IMG/VR virus record: IMGVR_UViG_3300031957_002643
Location: 124,001-188,000 of that record
Reading direction: 5' to 3' (one strand)
DNA length: 64,000 nucleotides
The notes beneath the pieces are model-generated. The model worked only from the letters and a program-made list of their open reading frames with translations. It ran no database searches and was not told the DNA's origin. This document shows, one piece after another, positions 2,765 to 60,514 of the stretch. Within the stretch, counting starts at the first letter, position 1. Each line of letters starts with the position of its first letter. A program made the position numbers and the translations under genes.

Positions 2765-2914
2765 TCTAAATTAATGACTGCCGATACCAGTCAGTTACTA
2801 CTCGCTGCTTATCAGCATGACCGCAACCAAGGTGCTGCTCGGGTCCAAGGAACGAATTCCTCTTGATCTTTAACGACCATGGGACATATGCATGGTCAGG
2901 GATATTTATATGAC

Positions 2915-2944
2915 AAAGCCCCAAGGCTTTCGCCAAGGGGCTTT
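2915..2944. terminator. Hairpin terminator downstream of the tmRNA
   Basis: AAAGCCCC...GGGGCTTT stem with an internal hairpin, flanked by A/T runs. Confidence 0.7.
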
Positions 2945-3237
2945 TTCTGTTTCGAGGGTTGTCAGACCCCAAGTGGCTTACGCAGCGATGCGAGCCTCAA
3001 CGGCAAAATCATTATCATTTGCAGTTATTTAAGTTGTGCCTATAACGGGCCACACCCGGCAATCTCAACTTCGCTAATACACACCCATCGATCCTATTTC
3101 GCCCCCATCAGCAGCACATACTGTCGCCATGTTCGCTACGCCGGTCATGACCAAACCTTAAAGTATGTGCTGTTGGTGGAGGCGTCGGGTACTGCCCCCG
3201 AGTCTGGTCTGCTGTTCGCTCCGCATCATCAATTACA
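2945..3237 (-). ncRNA. ssrA: Permuted two-piece tmRNA (alphaproteobacterial type), tag ANDNDFAVEARIAA
   Basis: Acceptor piece ending GACTCGGGGGCAGTACCCGACGCCTCCACCA (CCA at 3174) comes first, then an intervening 11-bp hairpin, then the coding piece starting GGGGGCGAAATAGGATCGA (3106). Tag frame 3022..2978. TTGACA-17-TATAAG promoter at 3272..3244. Confidence 0.95.
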
Positions 3238-3268
3238 AATATACTTATAAGGGTTACCGATTCAAATG

Positions 3269-3555
3269 TCAACCGGTTTTTTGCTTATTGTCAGAATTTC
3301 TTCCAATATGGTATCCATCACAAAATAAGCACTTGTAGTTGCTGTAATAGTAGCCGTACTTTTTCTGCATTTTTTGTGCAGCCTTAGTGGCAGATTTCTT
3401 GCTTCCATAGGCAATCTTTGGCTGACCATTCGCATTTTCATGAGAGCGCCTACTACGAAGGCCTCGCATGTGACCTTTGCGCAGATTTCTCAAAAAGCGA
3501 GTTAAGGGGCCTTGGTCCAAAACAACCAGCCAGAGGTTTCTAAGTTTAATCATGT
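3269..3555 (-). CDS. Small basic hypothetical protein with C-x2-C..H motif (start approximate)
   Basis: C-terminal part of track ORF 3269..3742, YKCLFCDGYHIG. Confidence 0.55.
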
Positions 3556-13592: not shown

Positions 13593-14195
13593 TTATGCTC
13601 TCATTCTAAATTCTGCATCCGATTTACATTCAGATTTCAGCTTGTCCAGCCATGCATGATTCTTGATTTTGGTCATCTTCAATTGTTTCTTGACCAATGC
13701 TTTACCAACGATGCCCTCAAAAGACATACCTTCGAATTCGCCAGTATTGACCTGCCGAACAACTTCTTCGGTGATATTCATGGTTCCAAGATATTCAGTA
13801 ATATGAAGATCGCCAAACAGCTTCAAGAAATCATTTGGTCCGAGAATACCTTTTTTATACGGGTTTACATCAAACAGGACGACATCTTTCACATCATCCT
13901 CTTCATGGTTCCCGGCAAAGCTATTCGGACCAAGGTATTCCATGAAACAGGTCGCACTATCATACCGCTGGTCACGATAGATACGTTCAAGATCATCAGA
14001 ATATTTCCCCATGAACAGATCGATAGCCGGGAAAAACGGATTGCCTTCTCCCAGTAGTTGGGTTCGGGTTCCAAATTTGTAGAACCCGTTCTTTCGAGAC
14101 CATTCGACTCGAATATTGGAACCGTCCAATTTTTCAAAGATATAATAGGGCTGGCCCTTAATGATATCTTTTGGAATACTAGGATACGTTTTCAT
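13593..14195 (-). CDS. Short RNA-ligase-family nucleotidyltransferase
   Basis: Motif I FEKLDGSNI, plus FMEY, FDV, EGIVGK and KIK. Confidence 0.8.
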   Translation of the reverse strand: MKTYPSIPKDIIKGQPYYIFEKLDGSNIRVEWSRKNGFYKFGTRTQLLGEGNPFFPAIDLFMGKYSDDLERIYRDQRYDSATCFMEYLGPNSFAGNHEEDDVKDVVLFDVNPYKKGILGPNDFLKLFGDLHITEYLGTMNITEEVVRQVNTGEFEGMSFEGIVGKALVKKQLKMTKIKNHAWLDKLKSECKSDAEFRMRA

Positions 14196-14488: not shown

Positions 14489-14558
14489 AACACAATATCC
14501 TTTGTTGAGTGACTAGTATACACCCAACGAATATAAAGTCAAGCTATATTTTGAGAAT

Positions 14559-14634
14559 TGGCAGGGGCATCAGGACTCGAACCCGAAGTTTCTGTTTTGG
14601 AGACAGACGTGTTAGCCATTAACACTATACCCCT
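14559..14634 (-). tRNA. trnW: tRNA-Trp(CCA)
   Basis: TCTGT-CTCCAAA-ACAGA, G73, CCA. Confidence 0.95.
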
Positions 14635-15098
14635 ACATTTTTACCACAATATGTGGCCGTTTGTGAATGACAATTAGGACATAATAAGCGCAAGTTGTCA
14701 ACCCTATGATCATTACTTATACCATTTATGTGATCAATTTGCAACGACAGGGGCTTTTCATTCCATGTTTCTCCTTGGCCGCATTCATAACATTGGTATT
14801 TTAGTATGTTTTCATTTACTAGACGATTTTTTAAACTTCTCATATTTTTATATGTTGAGTTTTCAACTAACACTTCTTCTAGTGGGAGTCTTCGTTTTTC
14901 TATCCCTCGATTCCGTAAATACACAATGGACGCGAAATGAGAAGTATCAAGACGCAAATCTAATATCCTCTCTTTGATCCGTCTATGATTATATGATCCG
15001 CCTGTGCTTTTTTTAAAATGTCGTAGTACATCCGAAACACATTGACTATCTTTTACTGCTAATTTAAAATCTTCATCACTTTCGTAATTCATAATCAC
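14625..15098 (-). CDS. HNH homing endonuclease
   Basis: CYECG, LQIDHING..ND, LCPNCHSQT; stop codon lies inside tRNA-Trp. Confidence 0.9.
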   Translation of the reverse strand: MIMNYESDEDFKLAVKDSQCVSDVLRHFKKSTGGSYNHRRIKERILDLRLDTSHFASIVYLRNRGIEKRRLPLEEVLVENSTYKNMRSLKNRLVNENILKYQCYECGQGETWNEKPLSLQIDHINGISNDHRVDNLRLLCPNCHSQTATYCGKNVGV

Positions 15099-15169
15099 CT
15101 ACAATACAATGGCCGATTTGGCCACTGTAATGTATTTACAGAAACCTTCTAAAACTATGTAACCGGGTG

Positions 15170-15409
15170 TCAACAGGGGATTTGGAAATAAATGTTCCCC
15201 CGTTTTTGCATAGCCATTGTGCGATTCTGCTTATCGACATTCGATAAATGATATGTAAATACATGTGTCGAAGGATCGATAAGGAGAAAGCTATGAACTT
15301 CATCAAAGAAAACATCAACACCATGGTCATGACTGTCATGTATGTCGTAATGATCGGTAGTGCCGCTGTTGTTATGGGTCAAGCGTTGGTCGCTTAATTC
15401 ATATTTCAC
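15170..15409 (-). CDS. Hypothetical protein
   Basis: ORF track. Confidence 0.55.
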   Translation of the reverse strand: MKYELSDQRLTHNNSGTTDHYDIHDSHDHGVDVFFDEVHSFLLIDPSTHVFTYHLSNVDKQNRTMAMQKRGNIYFQIPC

Positions 15410-15477: not shown

Positions 15478-17835
15478 TTAAATACTTGCACCCGGCTCTT
15501 CGATACGAAGTTCAACATAGATGAATTCTGTTGCAGTTACCGGGATCATGGCAACTTCAACCCATAATTCATTACGTGCTCTTCTATCAGCCGTGTTGAG
15601 TGTTTCGTCACAACGGACTGCATAATCCTCGACTGCACCAGCAGCGGATAGACCCGCAAAGTAGCGATTAACCGTATTGCGGACAGAGGACCATGTACCA
15701 GCCAAGTTTGGCTGTCCAAGATATGGAAGAAGCAATTGCTTGACTTCGTATCTGATCTTAGAGACCAAACGTGAAACGTTGACACGGTTCGTAAGTTCGG
15801 AACCACCATAGACAGTCTTGTTGCCCATATTTCTCAAACCGACACGGTAGATGTTTTTAACCATGTTGATCTGATTATTATACAGAATATCGGACTGACC
15901 ATCTGTTAGATTGACGACCTTGTAAGCACCTGCATCCGTGATGTATCCAACAGAAGAAACTCTGTTGATGACACCATTTGCATAACCGATAGATGCCTGC
16001 CATGGGCCGGAATTGTTGTCGGTTCTAACAAGCATCGGAAGTACATAGGCAGATGCCGGTGCAACGATGTTTGTTCCATCAACATTCGCCATAAGTGCAT
16101 GTGGATAATACATGGATGCGACCGCATTTGACGCAGATGCAAAGCCTTCTTCGCCTGTTTCAGATGCAGATGCACTATTTGTCTTCCAATCTGCGGCAAG
16201 AACTTCTTTACCAGATGCAGTTCCAGAAGCTACCATTCTGAATGGAACATCGGCAATGACATGAGCACGCTCATTGATCGCTGTAGAAACAGCAACCATA
16301 TCATCATAAAGTTCTGGATATCCCGGTGCGGCAATAAGCTGGTACAAGATTGATTCAGACTTCAATTCATCCGTGTCAGACAATGCAGCCTGAAGCTTGG
16401 AAGAAATCATGTAACGCTGTGCTTTGCGCAAGAAGCGAGCACCAGCAATTGGCTTCCAGCGACCATCAGCAGATTCCCATGTATCTTTTACACCAGAAGC
16501 AATAGTTACTGGCTCATAGGTATCATCATAAACCTTGACCGTGCACTTCGTTGCAGGGTCATCCAAGTTCAACCAGATGGAACCATTAGCAACAAGAGTT
16601 GGAGCGGTATAGGTAGAAGTGATGCTGACAGAAGACGTAATATCTTCCCAACCAGAACCAGTGTAGCGCTTGATGACCGGGAAGTTATCCAGATTGTCGC
16701 CTGAAATATCTACCCAGAATGCACCTGTTGCTGGTGATGCCGGTGCTGATGCACTGATAACTTTTTCTGTAGCAGTTGGGTCTGCATCAGTCGTTGTGGT
16801 GATTGCAACCCATTCATCAGAAACTTCTTTGTACAATGCAAAATCGGTGATGTCTTCGGAGTACCAAAGGTCACCATTGACCGCAGTTGTAGTTGGTGCC
16901 GCAGCTTGAACAGTTGCAGTCAGAGCAACATAAGCTGTTCCGTTAGCAACCTTCAATGGGTGTTGACCGTCATCTGTAAAGGTGGACAAGTCTTCCCATA
17001 CCAAACCAGAAGTTTTGTCTGTTGGTTCGGTTGTTGAGCGAGTTGGAATGACTTCAACCCAAGTCGCATCAGATGCACGGTACTTTGAAAGTTTAAGATC
17101 ATATCCACCAGAAGAAGCAGTTGTCTTCCACCAGTAGTCGTTTGCACCCGCACCCAATGGTGCAGTGTCAGAAATCCAAACGTCAGCCGTTGCTGCTGTT
17201 CTTGAATTGATAGATGTTGCCGACAAGTCGGTTGAACCAACATCAGCCCACGTTGTACCATCTGTCTTGACTTTAACAGTGCCGTCAGCAGTTGAGTAAT
17301 CAAAGGCGATGTCGCCTTCAGAACCGTTACCAGCAGCCGGTGCAGTTGTGTAAACTGCTGCGGTTAGTGCTTCCCATGCTGAGTTGGCAGCATTCCTGCG
17401 ATAGAAACCAGTTACAACTGCGTCACTATCAATCCAATATGTTCCATCTGCTGGTGGATTGACGGGTTCAGTTGAAGAAGGAAGCAACTGATCGAGATCA
17501 ATGTCAGCACGAACGTAATATGCAAGAGAAGAGGTCGCCATGAAATTCCATAGAGCGTGCAAACCATATTCATTACACTCGTGTCCATGGACCTGCAAAC
17601 CACCACTCGTTACGAATGTCGGATTACCGAGAAGTTGAAGAACTTCTCTTTGTGATGTCACAGAGCGAACCGTGTTGCTTTCCGTGGTTCCTGCGGCAAT
17701 GCCTGTTCCCGATGGGTTCGACTTGCTTTCTCTCGTTGCTAGAACGAAAAGCGGAACAGTCGTCGGAAATGTCTCCGCATACTGTGACTGGTTGTTGATG
17801 CTAACTTGTACGTTAGGCGAGCTTAGTGTAGCCAT
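15478..17835 (-). CDS. Tail sheath protein (gp18-like) with large internal insertion
   Basis: MATLSSPNVQVSI, APGYPEL, YYPH, APAS, NRVNVSRLV, EVAMIPVTATEFIYV. Confidence 0.93.
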   Translation of the reverse strand: MATLSSPNVQVSINNQSQYAETFPTTVPLFVLATRESKSNPSGTGIAAGTTESNTVRSVTSQREVLQLLGNPTFVTSGGLQVHGHECNEYGLHALWNFMATSSLAYYVRADIDLDQLLPSSTEPVNPPADGTYWIDSDAVVTGFYRRNAANSAWEALTAAVYTTAPAAGNGSEGDIAFDYSTADGTVKVKTDGTTWADVGSTDLSATSINSRTAATADVWISDTAPLGAGANDYWWKTTASSGGYDLKLSKYRASDATWVEVIPTRSTTEPTDKTSGLVWEDLSTFTDDGQHPLKVANGTAYVALTATVQAAAPTTTAVNGDLWYSEDITDFALYKEVSDEWVAITTTTDADPTATEKVISASAPASPATGAFWVDISGDNLDNFPVIKRYTGSGWEDITSSVSITSTYTAPTLVANGSIWLNLDDPATKCTVKVYDDTYEPVTIASGVKDTWESADGRWKPIAGARFLRKAQRYMISSKLQAALSDTDELKSESILYQLIAAPGYPELYDDMVAVSTAINERAHVIADVPFRMVASGTASGKEVLAADWKTNSASASETGEEGFASASNAVASMYYPHALMANVDGTNIVAPASAYVLPMLVRTDNNSGPWQASIGYANGVINRVSSVGYITDAGAYKVVNLTDGQSDILYNNQINMVKNIYRVGLRNMGNKTVYGGSELTNRVNVSRLVSKIRYEVKQLLLPYLGQPNLAGTWSSVRNTVNRYFAGLSAAGAVEDYAVRCDETLNTADRRARNELWVEVAMIPVTATEFIYVELRIEEPGASI

Positions 17836-21011: not shown

Positions 21012-21958
21012 TGAAGAAGCCCTCAGACACAAGGTCCAAGGGCTTCTAAAGCTTGGCCACATGCTATCCTTACAGACCCGCATGTACTCTTTTGAAAGCC
21101 TGAGATTAAGGCTTCTAACGATGACCTTTGGACCGCACCGAAGCCCTTGCGAGGCTTGTTAATCCGTTATCCACAAATTGGTGTCACCACTCAACTTGTA
21201 TTCACCAGTGCTGCCTTTTTTGAGGTGTGGCCTTTCACCTGTCACGCTGTGCTATTCGTCAGACTTTGATCCACCTGCCTTGCGAGCAGTTCGAGGTTGC
21301 AGCCCCTATGAACTCCGTTCTAACAATCATCTTTGGCTTGCGGCCTCCGATGAACCCTGTTCCTTACTAGGCAGGGTATTAAGCACTTTTCACACAACGC
21401 CGAACCAGTCTTTGCGTTTTATCTTCTGAGAAGGGGTTGAACCTTCGACAGATCGCTTTGAATGCGATTGCTCTACCACTGAGCTATCAGTAACCTACCT
21501 CGATGTGCTGGTCCTGTTGCTTCGCTACCTGTTGGTAACAAAATACAACACACCGACTGTCGTTCACCCGCTAAGGCTAATAAACCAAACTTCTGGATTA
21601 GTCATCACCACCAAAGTGATGCCGTCACCCATTGTTTTGCGAACCGCCCTTACCCGCTAAGGCTCGAACCTGTCCACTATCCGTTAACCATCACATTCAA
21701 CCGTTTAGCATGTGAATCTGCGGGTGCTAACCGCACAGGTCTCGGTGTTACCCAAACCTTCATCACCGGTCTTACTGCTTAGCGCATCCATGGCTGAATA
21801 CGCGCCCTAATAGGCTTGGCTCGGACTTGTATAGCTGAACCATTGCTGGCGCGAGTATGTAGGAATTCCCGCTTTGGGCTGGTTACCCAGCTTATTCTTA
21901 ATGGACGCTATACCGCCCAAACTCTTATTTCATTTCCCAGTGGCCGTAACCACATCGT
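21012..21958 (-). ncRNA. Large structured ncRNA, GOLLD-like, with an embedded tRNA-like domain
   Basis: ~950 nt without a credible ORF; TTTACA-17-TATATA promoter at 21994..21966; many minus-strand hairpins with GTAA/GCAA loops; 3' hairpin at about 21016..21046. Confidence 0.65.
21422..21493 (-). tRNA. tRNA-like element with UCA (opal-reading) anticodon; imperfect acceptor stem, no CCA
   Basis: TA-GCTC-AGTGGTA-GAGC, ATCGC-ATTCAAA-GCGAT, GAAGG-TTCAACC-CCTTC. Confidence 0.75.
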
Positions 21959-26165: not shown

Positions 26166-26260
26166 TGGCTCCCATCTGAGGTATCGAACCTCACCCGCGT
26201 CTCATCAACGCAGACCTCCGGTTAACAGCCGGGTACCTTCACCGTGCCAGTCCGATGGGA
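26166..26260 (-). tRNA. trnN: tRNA-Asn(GTT) with long variable arm
   Basis: CCCGG-CTGTTAA-CCGGA, ~24-nt variable region, 7-bp acceptor, GCCA. Confidence 0.8.
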
Positions 26261-34769: not shown

Positions 34770-35195
34770 CTATTGTTTTTCAAGGAGTTTTTCGATTTCC
34801 CAAAGAATTGTTTTGGGATTTCCTTTTCCCCGAATCTTCTTCATCACCATTCCCATCAATTTCTGGGCATTGGTTTCATCCGGGTTTTCCGCCAGAACTC
34901 CATCAATAACATCTCCAATGGGAATGAGATGATTGGTTTGTTCAGGAAGATATTCACCAATAATTTTGATCTCATCCAAAATTTCTTGGGTTTCTCTGAG
35001 GTCTCTCGATTTCTCAAGGTTCTTCATGAAGTACTTTGCGGCCTTCTGAAGATCATCATTGGTTGGATCGCGTTGCTCATTCTTTGCACGAGTATTCGCG
35101 TCGGCCAGCAGGGTTGTCAGTACCTTTGCACGAAAGGTATCACGATTTTTGCGAGCTTCTAGAGCTTCGCGTTTCAAGTCTTCAAGGTTTTTCAT
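34770..35195 (-). CDS. GatB/YqeY domain protein
   Basis: LKREALEARKNRD..RAKVL, EYLPEQ, MGMVMKKIRGK. Confidence 0.85.
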   Translation of the reverse strand: MKNLEDLKREALEARKNRDTFRAKVLTTLLADANTRAKNEQRDPTNDDLQKAAKYFMKNLEKSRDLRETQEILDEIKIIGEYLPEQTNHLIPIGDVIDGVLAENPDETNAQKLMGMVMKKIRGKGNPKTILWEIEKLLEKQ

Positions 35196-44269: not shown

Positions 44270-44347
44270 TGGAGAACCGGGAGGGATTCGAACCCCCGGC
44301 GCATGGGGTAAAAACCCATCGCTCTGGCCAGACTGAGCTACCGGTTC
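44270..44347 (-). tRNA. trnK: tRNA-Lys(TTT)
   Basis: ATGGG-TTTTTAC-CCCAT, CCA. Confidence 0.9.
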
Positions 44348-44805
44348 AAAAATGGAATATTAACAAAATCATCAAACATACGAGTTGTATTTCCGTTTTT
44401 TGTTTTTGGTATTGTATGTCGAAATACTAACATAGTATTATTACTGTTTAGAGCCTCTTGAGCATTAATCCATGCGATCTTATCTGTTTCGTTGTCTACT
44501 ACTGCAAACCAGTCTATATGTTTGACATCATACCGAAATTTATAATTCGGACCAGATTTGGTAAGATATAATTTTGTTGTTTCTGGTGATGATTTTTCAC
44601 GATTATAACATTTAACTTGAACTTTGTGTAAATCTCCCTGTTCGTCTTCAACTATGAAATCTATTTTTGAATTATCACCAATGTCGGTAAAGACCGAAAG
44701 CCCATACTTTAAACATTGTGTAATAACCAAAAATTCACCATAAGAACCCAAATCTTTATTATGCATAAGTACCATCCGGTTAATTGTCTCATGGTACTTA
44801 TGCAT
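44338..44805 (-). CDS. PD-(D/E)XK homing endonuclease (I-Ssp6803I-like family); start at 44805, 44775 or 44766
   Basis: DLGSYGEFLV, SKIDFIV, KVQVK; located between two tRNA-Lys genes. Confidence 0.8.
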   Translation of the reverse strand: MHKYHETINRMVLMHNKDLGSYGEFLVITQCLKYGLSVFTDIGDNSKIDFIVEDEQGDLHKVQVKCYNREKSSPETTKLYLTKSGPNYKFRYDVKHIDWFAVVDNETDKIAWINAQEALNSNNTMLVFRHTIPKTKNGNTTRMFDDFVNIPFLNR

Positions 44806-44817
44806 AATATCAAAACT

Positions 44818-44892
44818 TGGTGAACCAGCCGGGATTCGAACCCGGAACAAAGGAATTAAAAGTTCCTTGCCTCACCATTCGGCCTCTGGTCC
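44818..44892 (-). tRNA. trnK: tRNA-Lys(TTT)
   Basis: AGGAA-CTTTTAA-TTCCT, CCA. Confidence 0.9.
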
Positions 44893-44904
44893 ATTAGATG
44901 CATT

Positions 44905-44981
44905 TGGTAAGCCGAGAGGGATTTGAACCCTCGACACGCGGAGTAAGAATCCGCTGCTCTGCCTGACTGAGCTACCGGCTT
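44905..44981 (-). tRNA. trnK: tRNA-Lys(CTT)
   Basis: GCGGA-TTCTTAC-TCCGC, CCA. Confidence 0.92.
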
Positions 44982-45711
44982 ACAAAATGCATCCTGATTT
45001 TTATAGGGAATAGGTTAACGCGCGCTTACGCACGTTTTCGTGCAGCACGTTTGGTTGCGATTGCTGGCATATGGAAGATCATTGCGTCCATGTTTTTACT
45101 TATAGTACTTTTCCGATCAGGTGTCAACACAGAAAATGCATTAAATGCGTTCCATACATGACATTGGTACCGTGATAGCAAGATGATCGGGGAGTGGATC
45201 ATCCAAAATGATGATACCAATCAGCTTGTCATCAGTTGCAGGCCCGGCATACGTTCCTTGAAAGGTCGTAGGGTTGGGAATATTCACGGTCTGAACCTTA
45301 TCACCAACTTTCAGCATTTTAATTACTCCATGTTCCATCAAATGCGAAACTAGTTTCGCAGTATCGTTTTTTCCTGTGTGTATGAATACAGTATCAGGCA
45401 TCAGGAAGCGGATACCACCCCTCAAGCCATTCATCAGGAAATCCACCATGACCGACAGGGGCAGCGAAGTTCCATCCAATATCGAATCCATCATCTGCAA
45501 GGCCCGGATGTCGCAAAACTGCATAAATGCCATTGAACCCTTTCAGATCAGGTCGATTGTCTCTCATTTCAGGATAGATGTTATCCCGAAATTTTACAAG
45601 TCGAGGTTTGCCATCTTTGATGTCATTCGTGATGGGTTGCATCTGAGTGTTTATAATGCGTTGTTCCTTGTGCATTGTGTTCTTATACCAGATATGCTAT
45701 AATTAGTCAAT

Positions 45712-59658: not shown

Positions 59659-59952
59659 GTGGGTGTGGCGAAATGGTAGACGCGACAGACTTATAGTGAT
59701 TGAGTGCTCTCTTAGAAATAGGAGATGTAGAACTGCTCAAATTCGGGGAAACCTGTAAAATGGCAATCCCGAGCCAAGCTTTCCTGAAAAGGATTGAAGG
59801 TGTAGAGACTAGACGGGCAGCATCTAAGTTGGGAAACCAATATGATGAAGGGATAGTCCAGACTACAAACCGTAATGGGCAGCGAAAGCTGTAGTTAGTA
59901 CGAAAATCTGTTTCCTTATGGAGTGGGGGTTCGAGTCCCCCCACCCACACCA
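59659..59952 (+). tRNA. trnL: tRNA-Leu(TAA), interrupted (exons 59659..59692 and 59903..59952)
   Basis: Spliced anticodon arm ACAGA-CTTAAAA-TCTGT; acceptor GTGGGTG/CACCCAC; ACCA. Confidence 0.95.
59693..59902 (+). mobile_element. Group I intron (IC3/trnL-type), 210 nt, no ORF
   Basis: 5' exon ends in U and intron ends in G; core elements AATTCGGGGAAACC, AATCCCGAGC, GTAGAGACTAGA, GAAGGGATAGTCC. Confidence 0.93.
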
Positions 59953-60007: not shown

Positions 60008-60514
60008 GTGTACAATATGGAATTAGAAAATATATTTAAAAGACGTGGTTATACTAAGCAAGAATTTATTACTGCTGTTGAAACTTCATTTAGTAAAAGA
60101 CAGGTCTTACATAAATTAAATCTTGTAGAAGCTGGTGGGAATTATAAAGTATTTGATCGTGCTGTGAAAGAGCTTGGGTTGGATACTTCACATTTTAAAG
60201 GCCAAGGTTATCTTTCAGGCAAAACTCATGATTGGTCCAAAAAGATTCCTATACAAGACATTCTGATTGAAAATTCAACGTATACCTCTTCATTCAATCT
60301 TAAAAATAGGCTATTATCAGAAGGACTTTTAATAGAACAATGTTCCAAATGCGGTATCAGTGATGAATGGCAGGGAGAACATTTATCATTGCATTTGGAA
60401 CACAAGAATGGTATAAACAATGATCACAGGATAGAAAATTTGACACTTCTCTGTCCTAATTGCCATTCACAAACCAAAAGCTACTGTGGTAGGAACAAAG
60501 GCAAATACAAATGA
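60008..60514 (+). CDS. HNH homing endonuclease, paralog of 14625..15098
   Basis: CSKCG, LHLEHKNGINNDHRIENLTLLCPNCHSQT. Confidence 0.9.
   Translation: MYNMELENIFKRRGYTKQEFITAVETSFSKRQVLHKLNLVEAGGNYKVFDRAVKELGLDTSHFKGQGYLSGKTHDWSKKIPIQDILIENSTYTSSFNLKNRLLSEGLLIEQCSKCGISDEWQGEHLSLHLEHKNGINNDHRIENLTLLCPNCHSQTKSYCGRNKGKYK

What the first reader, a model, noticed from the sequence alone, without database searches (positions are those of the whole stretch)
14625..14634. Two homing-endonuclease ORFs use the U8-A9-G10 of the downstream tRNA as their stop codon
Seen: the HNH stop TAG is 14627..14625, positions 8-10 of tRNA-Trp. The PD-(D/E)XK stop TAG is 44340..44338, positions 8-10 of tRNA-Lys. Established: RNase P cuts at tRNA +1. 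Inference: tRNA maturation leaves non-stop endonuclease mRNA, which would be tmRNA-tagged and degraded, limiting toxic nucleases. It may instead be a by-product of insertion right at the tRNA 5' end.
Basis: partly seen in the sequence, partly recalled or inferred. Interest (0 to 1): 0.6.

Follow-up and report, generated by a model that had tools for sequence, protein, structure and literature searches.

The report
Endonuclease genes that stop inside tRNAs
In a 335-kb marine jumbo phage, two selfish endonuclease genes wedged between tRNA genes have no stop codon of their own and end on the conserved U8-A9-G10 of the next tRNA; this is real and recurs in many phages, but it looks mostly like a side effect of tight packing, and the idea that tRNA processing thereby cripples the nuclease mRNA was already proposed for phages T4 and T5.

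Summary
The HNH ORF (window 15092..14625, minus strand) and the PD-(D/E)XK ORF (44766..44338, minus strand) both end on the TAG at positions 8-10 of tRNA-Trp and tRNA-Lys(UUU).

A third ORF outside the window, which is not a recognisable nuclease, does the same at tRNA-Thr. Its only homologue (47% identity) keeps the overlap.

In 80 IMG/VR loci with homologues of the HNH gene, 76 have tRNA genes within 1.5 kb. Eight homologues stop exactly at tRNA 8-10, in five or six separate lineages. Nineteen have their own stop, starting 4-29 nt before the tRNA.

Over 401 tRNAs, stops at 8-10 are about three times enriched among overlapping ORFs, and deep overlaps are depleted.

Best reading: the endonuclease genes sit flush against the tRNA 5' end and stop at the first in-frame stop, a triplet that tRNA function keeps fixed.

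RNase P cleavage at +1 would indeed leave an mRNA without a stop codon. No RNA data exist to show this, and most homologues do not depend on it.

Precedent exists. The T5 annotation has hegC and hegD overlapping tRNA genes. The 2008 SegB paper proposed that tRNA maturation impairs the mRNA of such genes. This is therefore a new member of a known kind, of moderate-to-low interest.

The parts
14625..15092 (-). HNH homing-endonuclease ORF, 155 aa. The conserved C-terminal motif ...CHSQT.TY.GKN is followed by V-G-V; the last base of the first V codon and the whole G and V codons are tRNA positions 1-7.
14559..14634 (-). tRNA-Trp(CCA) with encoded CCA. U is at -1 in the leader.
   Evidence: 54.1 bits
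14625..14627 (-). Shared TAG: the stop codon of the HNH ORF and also U8-A9-G10 of tRNA-Trp. A TAA follows one codon later, at tRNA positions 14-16.
15100..15134 (-). Stable stem-loop directly upstream of the GGUGA Shine-Dalgarno (15099..15095) and the ATG (15092..15090) of the HNH ORF. In the minimum-free-energy fold an outer helix also pairs the AUG region.
   Evidence: 91-nt fold, -26.0 kcal/mol, z -4.5
44338..44766 (-). PD-(D/E)XK_5 endonuclease ORF, 142 aa. The family's conserved C-terminus ...FDD..IPF is followed by L-N-R; the last base of the L codon and the whole N and R codons are tRNA positions 1-7.
44270..44347 (-). tRNA-Lys(UUU), second copy, with encoded CCA. U is at -1 in the leader.
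   Evidence: 63.4 bits
44338..44340 (-). Shared TAG: the stop codon of the PD-(D/E)XK ORF and also U8-A9-G10 of tRNA-Lys. The next in-frame stop lies 54 codons further on.
44757..44809 (-). Perfect 19-bp hairpin whose 3' arm contains the start codon (44766..44764) of the PD-(D/E)XK ORF.
   Evidence: -34.9 kcal/mol, z -6.0; a comparable hairpin stands before the ATG of homologue L088 (z -4.4)
44818..44981 (-). tRNA-Lys(CUU) 44981..44905 and the first tRNA-Lys(UUU) 44892..44818, immediately upstream of the endonuclease ORF. The ORF fills the gap between two tRNA genes.

Best explanation
Free-standing homing-endonuclease genes have settled in the gaps of this phage's tRNA islands, packed flush against the 5' end of the next tRNA gene. 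These two copies have no stop codon of their own, so translation runs seven bases into the tRNA and ends at the first in-frame stop, U8-A9-G10. tRNA function holds that triplet constant, so once an ORF uses it the stop cannot drift. Frames that would read deeper add a long tail and are removed by selection. That explains why 8-10 recurs and why the overlap can persist between distant relatives. The consequence is inferred, not shown. The endonuclease ORF and the tRNA lie on one precursor RNA, and RNase P cleavage at +1 removes the stop. Only unprocessed precursor can then give full-length nuclease, and processed mRNA is a non-stop substrate for ribosome rescue. Together with the hairpins at the start codons, this would keep nuclease output low. 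I regard it as a tolerated or mildly useful side effect rather than the reason the arrangement exists.
For: Shown: both overlaps, plus a third in the same genome. The conserved C-terminal motifs of both families end exactly at tRNA +1, so only the stop is missing. Of 80 HNH-homologue loci, 76 have tRNA genes within 1.5 kb. Thirty-one ORF ends lie within 30 nt of a same-strand tRNA 5' end: 8 stop at 8-10, 4 overlap otherwise, and 19 have their own stop 4-29 nt upstream. The overlap state occurs in five or six separate lineages, each with non-overlapping close kin, and near-identical endonuclease genes precede different tRNAs, for example L023 before tRNA-Gln and L036 before tRNA-Tyr. All three distinct PD-(D/E)XK homologue contexts have their own stop 9-76 nt before the next tRNA. 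ORFs that are not nucleases do the same: an ORFan in this genome and its 47%-identical homologue, and a sulfotransferase. Shallow stops are enriched and deep overlaps depleted: a stop starting at position 8 or earlier in 20 of 33 against 21% expected, and more than 40 nt deep in 2 of 33 against 40% expected. About 16 other ORFs in this genome end 5-47 nt before a tRNA, so packing is tight throughout. The closest available relative has a different endonuclease gene, on the opposite strand, flush with the tRNA-Lys(UUU) 3' end. T5 has hegC, hegD and two other ORFs overlapping tRNA 5' ends at other positions.
Against: Position 8-10 is enriched even among shallow overlaps (14 of 31 against 24% expected, p = 0.009). 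The ORF/tRNA-Thr overlap is kept at 47% protein identity across an in-frame 6-nt indel at the junction. Both endonuclease ORFs also carry unusually stable start-region hairpins. The phage encodes its own tmRNA. Each of these would also fit a selected device for low expression. No expression data exist either way.
Confidence: 0.6

Rival explanations
1. Selected expression limiter. The stop is placed inside the tRNA so that RNase P maturation converts the endonuclease mRNA into a non-stop message. Its product is then tagged by tmRNA (host or phage-encoded) and degraded, which limits a potentially toxic nuclease.
For: The sequence logic holds. 8-10 is enriched. The arrangement arose repeatedly. 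Start-codon hairpins suggest multilayer repression, as in the T4 endonuclease genes (PMC2330249). A phage tmRNA lies in the same window. [quoted passage not shown]
Against: Most family members keep their own stop a few bases before the tRNA (19 of 31; all three PD-(D/E)XK contexts). The state flips among close kin. ORFs that are not nucleases show it too. There are no RNA or protein data.
Confidence: 0.25
2. Endonuclease-plus-tRNA cassette. The nuclease gene and the overlapped tRNA move together as one unit, and the overlap simply welds the two so that they cannot be separated by recombination.
For: The overlapped tRNA-Lys(UUU) is a second copy directly after another tRNA-Lys(UUU). Several homologue loci have same-amino-acid tRNAs on both sides of the endonuclease gene, for example L006, L030 and L051; in L087 a separate HNH_3 ORF lies between two tRNA-Ile(GAU) genes. 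The relative G001 lacks the second tRNA-Lys(UUU), and its tRNA-Trp differs in sequence (59% identity).
Against: Similarity among tRNA-Trp and tRNA-Lys genes does not track linkage to the endonuclease gene (identity 0.43-0.66, no grouping). Near-identical endonuclease genes precede different tRNAs. No clean empty site was found.
Confidence: 0.08
3. Not a real termination site: an assembly error, a decayed pseudogene, a false tRNA call, or a TAG that is read through by the phage's own tRNA(CUA).
For: The genome encodes a well-formed tRNA with anticodon CUA (70.7 bits), and TAG is the rarest stop (57 of 437).
Against: Two assemblies agree base for base. Both ORFs keep full-length conserved domains. 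The tRNAs score well. The genome shows the standard code and no excess of backup stops after TAG. The same architecture is seen in unrelated contigs.
Confidence: 0.04

Closest known systems
Phage T4 SegB (GIY-YIG homing endonuclease in the tRNA gene cluster; PMC2330249)
   Same: A free-standing endonuclease gene sits between tRNA genes, directly upstream of a tRNA. SegB recognises a conserved tRNA-gene motif. The authors propose that tRNA maturation cleaves the segB mRNA at its very 3' end and so lowers expression, alongside a sequestering hairpin.
   Different: It belongs to a different nuclease family. In the T4 RefSeq record the segB TAA ends 5 nt before tRNA-Arg +1, so there is no overlap. 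Cleavage specificity here is unknown.
Phage T5 hegC, hegD and neighbouring ORFs in the tRNA region (NC_005859 annotation)
   Same: HNH endonuclease ORFs are annotated as running into the 5' part of the next tRNA gene. The same paper cites an expression-lowering effect of transcript processing as proposed for the T5 endonucleases.
   Different: The stops fall at tRNA positions 12-14 (hegC/tRNA-Ser2), 21-23 (hegD/tRNA-Gln2, a pseudo-tRNA), 22-24 (T5.069, T5orf172 domain) and 4-6 (T5.057), not 8-10. The HNH subfamily is different.
E. coli arfA (mRNA without a stop codon, repressed by trans-translation; PMC10107115 abstract)
   Same: The mRNA lacks a stop codon, so tmRNA activity represses the protein. 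From my own knowledge, an endonuclease cut creates that non-stop mRNA.
   Different: From my own knowledge, the cut in arfA is made by RNase III in a hairpin, not by RNase P at a tRNA. arfA regulation is shown experimentally, whereas here it is only inferred.
tRNA punctuation in animal mitochondria (own knowledge)
   Same: tRNA excision defines the 3' end of the upstream mRNA, and coding sequence abuts or overlaps the tRNA.
   Different: There, polyadenylation completes a partial stop codon. Here, cleavage would remove a complete one.
I-Ssp6803I, PD-(D/E)XK homing endonuclease (PDB 2OST)
   Same: It matches a profile of the PD-(D/E)XK ORF family only weakly (E 0.008). That 2OST is I-Ssp6803I, that it targets a tRNA gene and that it belongs to PF11645 are from my own knowledge, not tested here.
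   Different: From my own knowledge it is intron-encoded within the tRNA, whereas this gene is free-standing between tRNAs. The sequence match is weak.

Membership tests
HNH (His-Me finger) endonuclease, PF01844 / PHROG 10822 | Significant match to the family profile over the catalytic core, with the Cys pairs and the H...N...H motif | tested here: met
   Pfam 28.1 bits (cut-off 21.4), PHROG 10822 E 8e-49. CxxC...DH...N...CPNCH is read in the translation.
PD-(D/E)XK_5 endonuclease, PF11645 | Match above the Pfam gathering score over the whole domain | tested here: met
   55.5 bits (cut-off 26.1), residues 1-132 on profile positions 1-133 of 138. All 26 homologues carry PF11645. A profile hit to 2OST is weak, E 0.008.
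Free-standing homing endonuclease gene | Sporadic presence or absence among related genomes at otherwise conserved sites | tested here: inconclusive
   The relative G001 (sheath protein 82% identical) has a tRNA-Trp without the HNH gene and no PD-(D/E)XK gene. However, the tRNA islands are rearranged, so no clean empty site exists. An HNH paralogue lies next to a group I intron.
Free-standing homing endonuclease gene | Site-specific cleavage of the allele lacking the gene, and gene conversion in mixed infection | not testable with these tools
   This needs purified protein and phage crosses.
Non-stop mRNA controlled by trans-translation (arfA-like) | The mRNA 3' end is generated upstream of the stop codon in vivo | not testable with these tools
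   No RNA runs hold this sequence. Only the position of the expected RNase P site relative to the stop is shown.
Non-stop mRNA controlled by trans-translation (arfA-like) | The protein is ssrA-tagged, and its level depends on tmRNA and the Clp proteases | not testable with these tools
   There are no proteomic data. A phage tmRNA gene is present, but that is not evidence of a link.
Canonical tRNA (the overlapped genes) | Cloverleaf model match with a paired acceptor stem, so that TAG is truly positions 8-10 | tested here: met
   ARAGORN and Rfam RF00005 give 54.1, 63.4 and 70.4 bits. Acceptor pairing was read directly.

The most novel reading that the evidence does not exclude
Capture of the invariant U8-R9-G10 as a stop codon is a convergently selected switch. 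Endonuclease genes in phage tRNA islands (and some other small genes) make their own synthesis mutually exclusive with maturation of the downstream tRNA. Every processed transcript is handed to trans-translation, possibly the phage's own tmRNA. Nuclease dose is thereby tied to the state of RNase P and tmRNA in the infected cell.
Probability: 0.2. Interest if true: 0.6.

Novelty: new member of a known kind. Interest (0 to 1): 0.35.

Why it matters
The finding shows that gene callers and annotators should not treat ORF/tRNA overlaps of exactly ten bases in phage tRNA islands as errors. It gives a simple rule: the first in-frame stop is usually the structurally fixed U8-A9-G10. It documents that one HNH subfamily is almost always found in or beside tRNA clusters and is often flush with a tRNA 5' end. 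If the inferred consequence is real, it would be a natural case of RNase P creating non-stop messages, and it could be tested in T5. As it stands, it extends an arrangement already annotated in T5 and a hypothesis already published for T4 SegB.

Tried and rejected
1. Expression evidence. Only two DNA runs from one seawater study hold the sequence and none is RNA. Laying them confirmed the DNA only.

2. Empty-site comparison. DNA searches of the phage collection found only tRNA-level matches. Loci found with the RNA-ligase neighbour were too distant (47-48% identity, no synteny). The neighbour of tRNA-Lys had no viral-contig relatives. The best relative (sheath protein 82% identical, L093/L094 = G002/G001) has rearranged tRNA islands, so no clean empty site exists.

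3. Co-mobility of endonuclease gene and tRNA. Alignments of tRNA-Lys and tRNA-Trp genes gave no grouping by linkage to the endonuclease gene, so this was left as a weak rival.

4. Alternative genetic code, prompted by the tRNA(CUA) and tRNA(UCA). A script that counted ORF coverage with each stop codon read as sense showed no gain. The genome shows the standard code and no other code was used. There is no excess of backup stops after TAG.

5. Identity of the third ORF. Pfam and PHROGs gave nothing, and the word search found one homologue only. That search sees only proteins 0.55-1.75 times the query length.

6. PD-(D/E)XK in viral contigs: no relatives by pattern scan. A single-sequence PDB search was blank.

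7. Cultured phages with the HNH subfamily (Pakpunavirus, Kayvirus, S-CRM01, a Suspvirus). The four contexts inspected show no overlap with an annotated tRNA 5' end.

8. The careful phylogeny did not finish in time, so the quick tree was used.

9. A recount gives 26 of 44.

The large profile search, structure prediction and complex prediction were not needed and were not run.

Full report
**What is there**

The window is bases 124001-188000 of a single 335,552-bp contig. It has 42% G+C, 44 tRNA genes and one tmRNA gene, and it comes from seawater metagenomes. It is a jumbo tailed phage: a tail-sheath gene lies at 15478..17835.

ARAGORN and Rfam agree on tRNA-Trp(CCA) at 14634..14559 and tRNA-Lys(UUU) at 44347..44270, both on the minus strand. 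Reading the sequence, tRNA-Trp begins AGGGGTA-TAG and tRNA-Lys begins GAACCGG-TAG. The acceptor stems pair with the 3' ends, and CCA is encoded.

The ORF with ATG at 15092 (155 aa) and the ORF with ATG at 44766 (142 aa) are open until exactly those TAGs. The first is an HNH endonuclease (Pfam PF01844; PHROG 10822, E 8e-49). The second is a PD-(D/E)XK_5 endonuclease (PF11645, E 8e-15). A profile of the second family weakly matches PDB 2OST (E 0.008).

Two independent Logan assemblies reproduce the first junction without a single difference.

**It is not limited to these two genes**

A scan of all 44 tRNAs in the genome found a third ORF ending on TAG 8-10, at tRNA-Thr(UGU) (genome 253081..253509, outside the window).

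- This ORF has no Pfam or PHROG family.
- It is called as a gene in the public protein collection.
- It has one homologue at 47% identity.
- On a syntenic 8-kb contig, that homologue also ends on positions 8-10 of tRNA-Thr(UGU), there as TAA.
- The reading frame is preserved across a 6-nt indel at the junction.

In the genome, 26 of 44 tRNAs carry TAG at 8-10. About 16 further mechanical ORFs end 5-47 nt before a tRNA. ORFs and tRNAs are therefore tightly packed throughout.

**Relatives of the HNH gene**

A pattern scan of IMG/VR returned 586 relatives, and the best 80 loci were kept.

- 76 of the 80 have tRNA genes within 1.5 kb.
- In 31, the ORF ends within 30 nt of the 5' end of a same-strand tRNA.
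- Of those 31, eight stop exactly at 8-10: tRNA-Gln in five, tRNA-Leu(UAA) in two, and a TGA in tRNA-Pro in one.
- Four overlap at other positions.
- Nineteen have their own stop, starting 4-29 nt upstream.

The family's conserved C-terminal motif (CHSQT..[FY].G[KR]N) lies 0-12 nt from tRNA +1 in many members. In the window's copy it is followed by only V-G-V, of which all but the first two bases are tRNA bases.

The same holds for the PD-(D/E)XK family. The conserved ...FDD..FPF end is followed here by L-N-R, coded almost entirely by tRNA positions 1-7. Its homologues also sit in tRNA clusters, usually just after a tRNA-Lys(UUU). In the three distinct contexts inspected, each has its own stop 9-76 nt before the next tRNA.

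On one of those contigs, a different HNH_3 ORF ends on 8-10 of a tRNA-Ile.

**How often, against chance**

Over 401 distinct tRNAs in 96 held loci, 33 ORFs of at least 80 aa end inside a same-strand tRNA.

| Measure | Observed | Expected (first stop, random frames) | p |
|---|---|---|---|
| Stop at 8-10, all overlaps | 14 of 33 | 14.5% | 9e-5 |
| Stop at 8-10, close lineages collapsed | 12 of 31 | 14.5% | 8e-4 |
| Stop at 8-10, own genome excluded | 11 of 30 | 14.5% | 0.002 |
| Stop at 8-10, shallow overlaps only | 14 of 31 | 24% | 0.009 |
| Stop starting at position 8 or earlier | 20 of 33 | 21% | 1e-6 |
| Overlap deeper than 40 nt | 2 of 33 | 40% | 1e-5 |

The pattern is a general preference for the shortest possible run into the tRNA. 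Position 8-10 is the commonest outcome because it is the first widely conserved stop triplet.

The loci were mostly chosen for carrying the HNH gene, so this is not an unbiased census. Most of the other overlapping ORFs are also endonucleases (HNH, HNH_3, T5orf172). Some are not, such as a sulfotransferase and ORFans.

**History**

On a quick maximum-likelihood tree of 70 distinct HNH sequences, the stop-at-8-10 state sits in five or six separate places, each next to relatives with their own stop. Near-identical endonuclease genes precede different tRNAs, for example L023 before tRNA-Gln and L036 before tRNA-Tyr. The state is gained or lost easily and does not define a clade.

The closest available relative of the phage (sheath protein 82% identical) shows the following:

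- Its tRNA-Trp has a different sequence and is preceded by a GatB/YqeY-domain ORF with its own stop 37 nt upstream.
- It has no PD-(D/E)XK gene in the fragments held.
- Its tRNA-Lys(CUU)/tRNA-Lys(UUU) pair is followed by a different HNH gene on the opposite strand, flush with the tRNA 3' end.

tRNA boundaries are therefore repeated landing sites for such genes, but no clean empty site was available.

**Mechanism**

Shown: the ORF and the tRNA overlap, so they must lie on one transcript whenever the ORF's stop codon is transcribed. The base at -1 is U in all three cases. A cut at +1 leaves an mRNA that ends two bases into a codon, with no in-frame stop.

Also shown: each of the two endonuclease ORFs has an unusually stable structure at its start.

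- The PD-(D/E)XK ORF has a perfect 19-bp hairpin whose 3' arm contains the AUG (z -6.0).
- The HNH ORF has a stem-loop abutting the Shine-Dalgarno sequence (z -4.5).

Inferred: RNase P cleavage competes with translation, processed mRNA is a non-stop substrate for ribosome rescue, and nuclease output is low.

The phage's own permuted tmRNA and its well-formed tRNA(CUA) (70.7 bits) could both touch this. Nothing links either of them to these genes. The genome shows the standard code.

**What is already known**

The SegB paper (PMC2330249) describes a homing endonuclease inside the T4 tRNA cluster that recognises a conserved tRNA-gene motif. Its Discussion proposes that segB mRNA is impaired by cleavage at its very end during tRNA-Arg maturation. 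It says the same kind of control was proposed for the T5 endonucleases in the tRNA cluster.

In the T4 record, the segB stop ends 5 nt before tRNA-Arg +1.

In the T5 record, four ORFs overlap tRNA 5' ends:

- hegC, by 14 nt
- hegD, by 23 nt
- T5.069, by 24 nt
- T5.057, by 6 nt

[quoted passage not shown] From my own knowledge, that non-stop mRNA is produced by an endonuclease cut. Literature searches found no description of the recurrent use of U8-A9-G10 itself.

**Verdict**

The most likely explanation is tight lodging of selfish nuclease genes, and occasionally other small genes, against tRNA 5' ends. The structurally fixed U8-A9-G10 then serves as the first available stop (confidence 0.6).

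The non-stop/tmRNA consequence is plausible and previously proposed, but it is untested. Judged from the many homologues with their own stops, it is not required for these genes (0.25 as a selected device).

This is a new member of a known kind, with interest 0.35.

Noticed in passing
window 21097-21556 (-): A full-length GOLLD RNA (Rfam RF02032, 177 bits, model positions 1-416). It encloses the tRNA-like gene with anticodon UCA at 21422-21493, which ARAGORN labels 'tRNA-SeC' (55 bits as tRNA).
   Followed up: partly
window 2887-3276 (-): A phage-encoded permuted (two-piece, alphaproteobacterial type) tmRNA with tag peptide ANDNDFAVEARIAA (Rfam alpha_tmRNA 110 bits). It hints at an alphaproteobacterial host. 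No link to the endonuclease genes was shown.
   Followed up: partly
genome 254867-254942 (+), i.e. L086:4867-4942; also L092:4380-4455: A well-formed tRNA with anticodon CUA (amber-suppressor type; 70.7 bits), conserved in the syntenic relative. The genome nevertheless shows the standard code. TAG is the rarest stop (57 of 437), and all three ORFs that end inside tRNAs end on it.
   Followed up: partly
window 59691-59875 (+) and 60008-60514 (+): A group I intron (RF00028, 50.8 bits) is followed by a paralogue of the HNH gene (phmmer E 2e-39; own stop, C-terminus ...GRNKGKYK). No long host ORF was recognised around the intron. The relative G001 has the orthologous HNH gene (L103:1486-1986).
   Followed up: partly
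window 15293-15397 (+): A small plus-strand ORF lies between the sheath terminator and the HNH gene. It has a strong AAGGAG ribosome-binding site and encodes a hydrophobic peptide of about 34 aa (MNFIKENINTMVM...).
   Followed up: no
window 34773-35195 (-); L094:9184-9606; L092:2992-3684; L090 3' end: GatB/YqeY-domain proteins recur next to tRNA genes in this phage and its relatives. Neighbouring contigs also carry a PolyA_pol-family (PF01743) enzyme (L087) and a PTH2 peptidyl-tRNA hydrolase (L092). An RNA-ligase-family gene follows tRNA-Trp (13593-14195).
   Followed up: no
window 26166-26260 (-): ARAGORN calls a 95-nt tRNA-Asn here, but Rfam gives no tRNA match at gathering score. It may be a false call or an interrupted tRNA.
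   Followed up: no
window 45099-45127 (-) and 14515-14542 (-): Sigma-70-like promoters flank the tRNA units. TTGACA-17-TATAAG lies upstream of the tRNA-Lys cluster; I read it by eye, and the scan did not list it because position 6 is G. TTGACT-16-TATACT lies just after tRNA-Trp. A weak TTGTCA-16-TATTGT lies inside the HNH 3' end (14673-14646) and would start transcription a few bases before tRNA-Trp.
   Followed up: no
L106:1064-1672 (-) beside tRNA-Lys(UUU) at L106:980-1063 (+); also L017, L025, L027, L057, L065, L067, L079: HNH ORFs on the opposite strand end flush with, or overlap, the 3' end of a tRNA gene. This convergent arrangement shows that both tRNA boundaries attract these genes.
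   Followed up: partly
L094:6437-8179 (+): In the closest relative, a 580-aa DUF7487 protein follows the sheath gene where this phage has the small peptide gene and the HNH gene. The region downstream of the sheath gene is variable.
   Followed up: no
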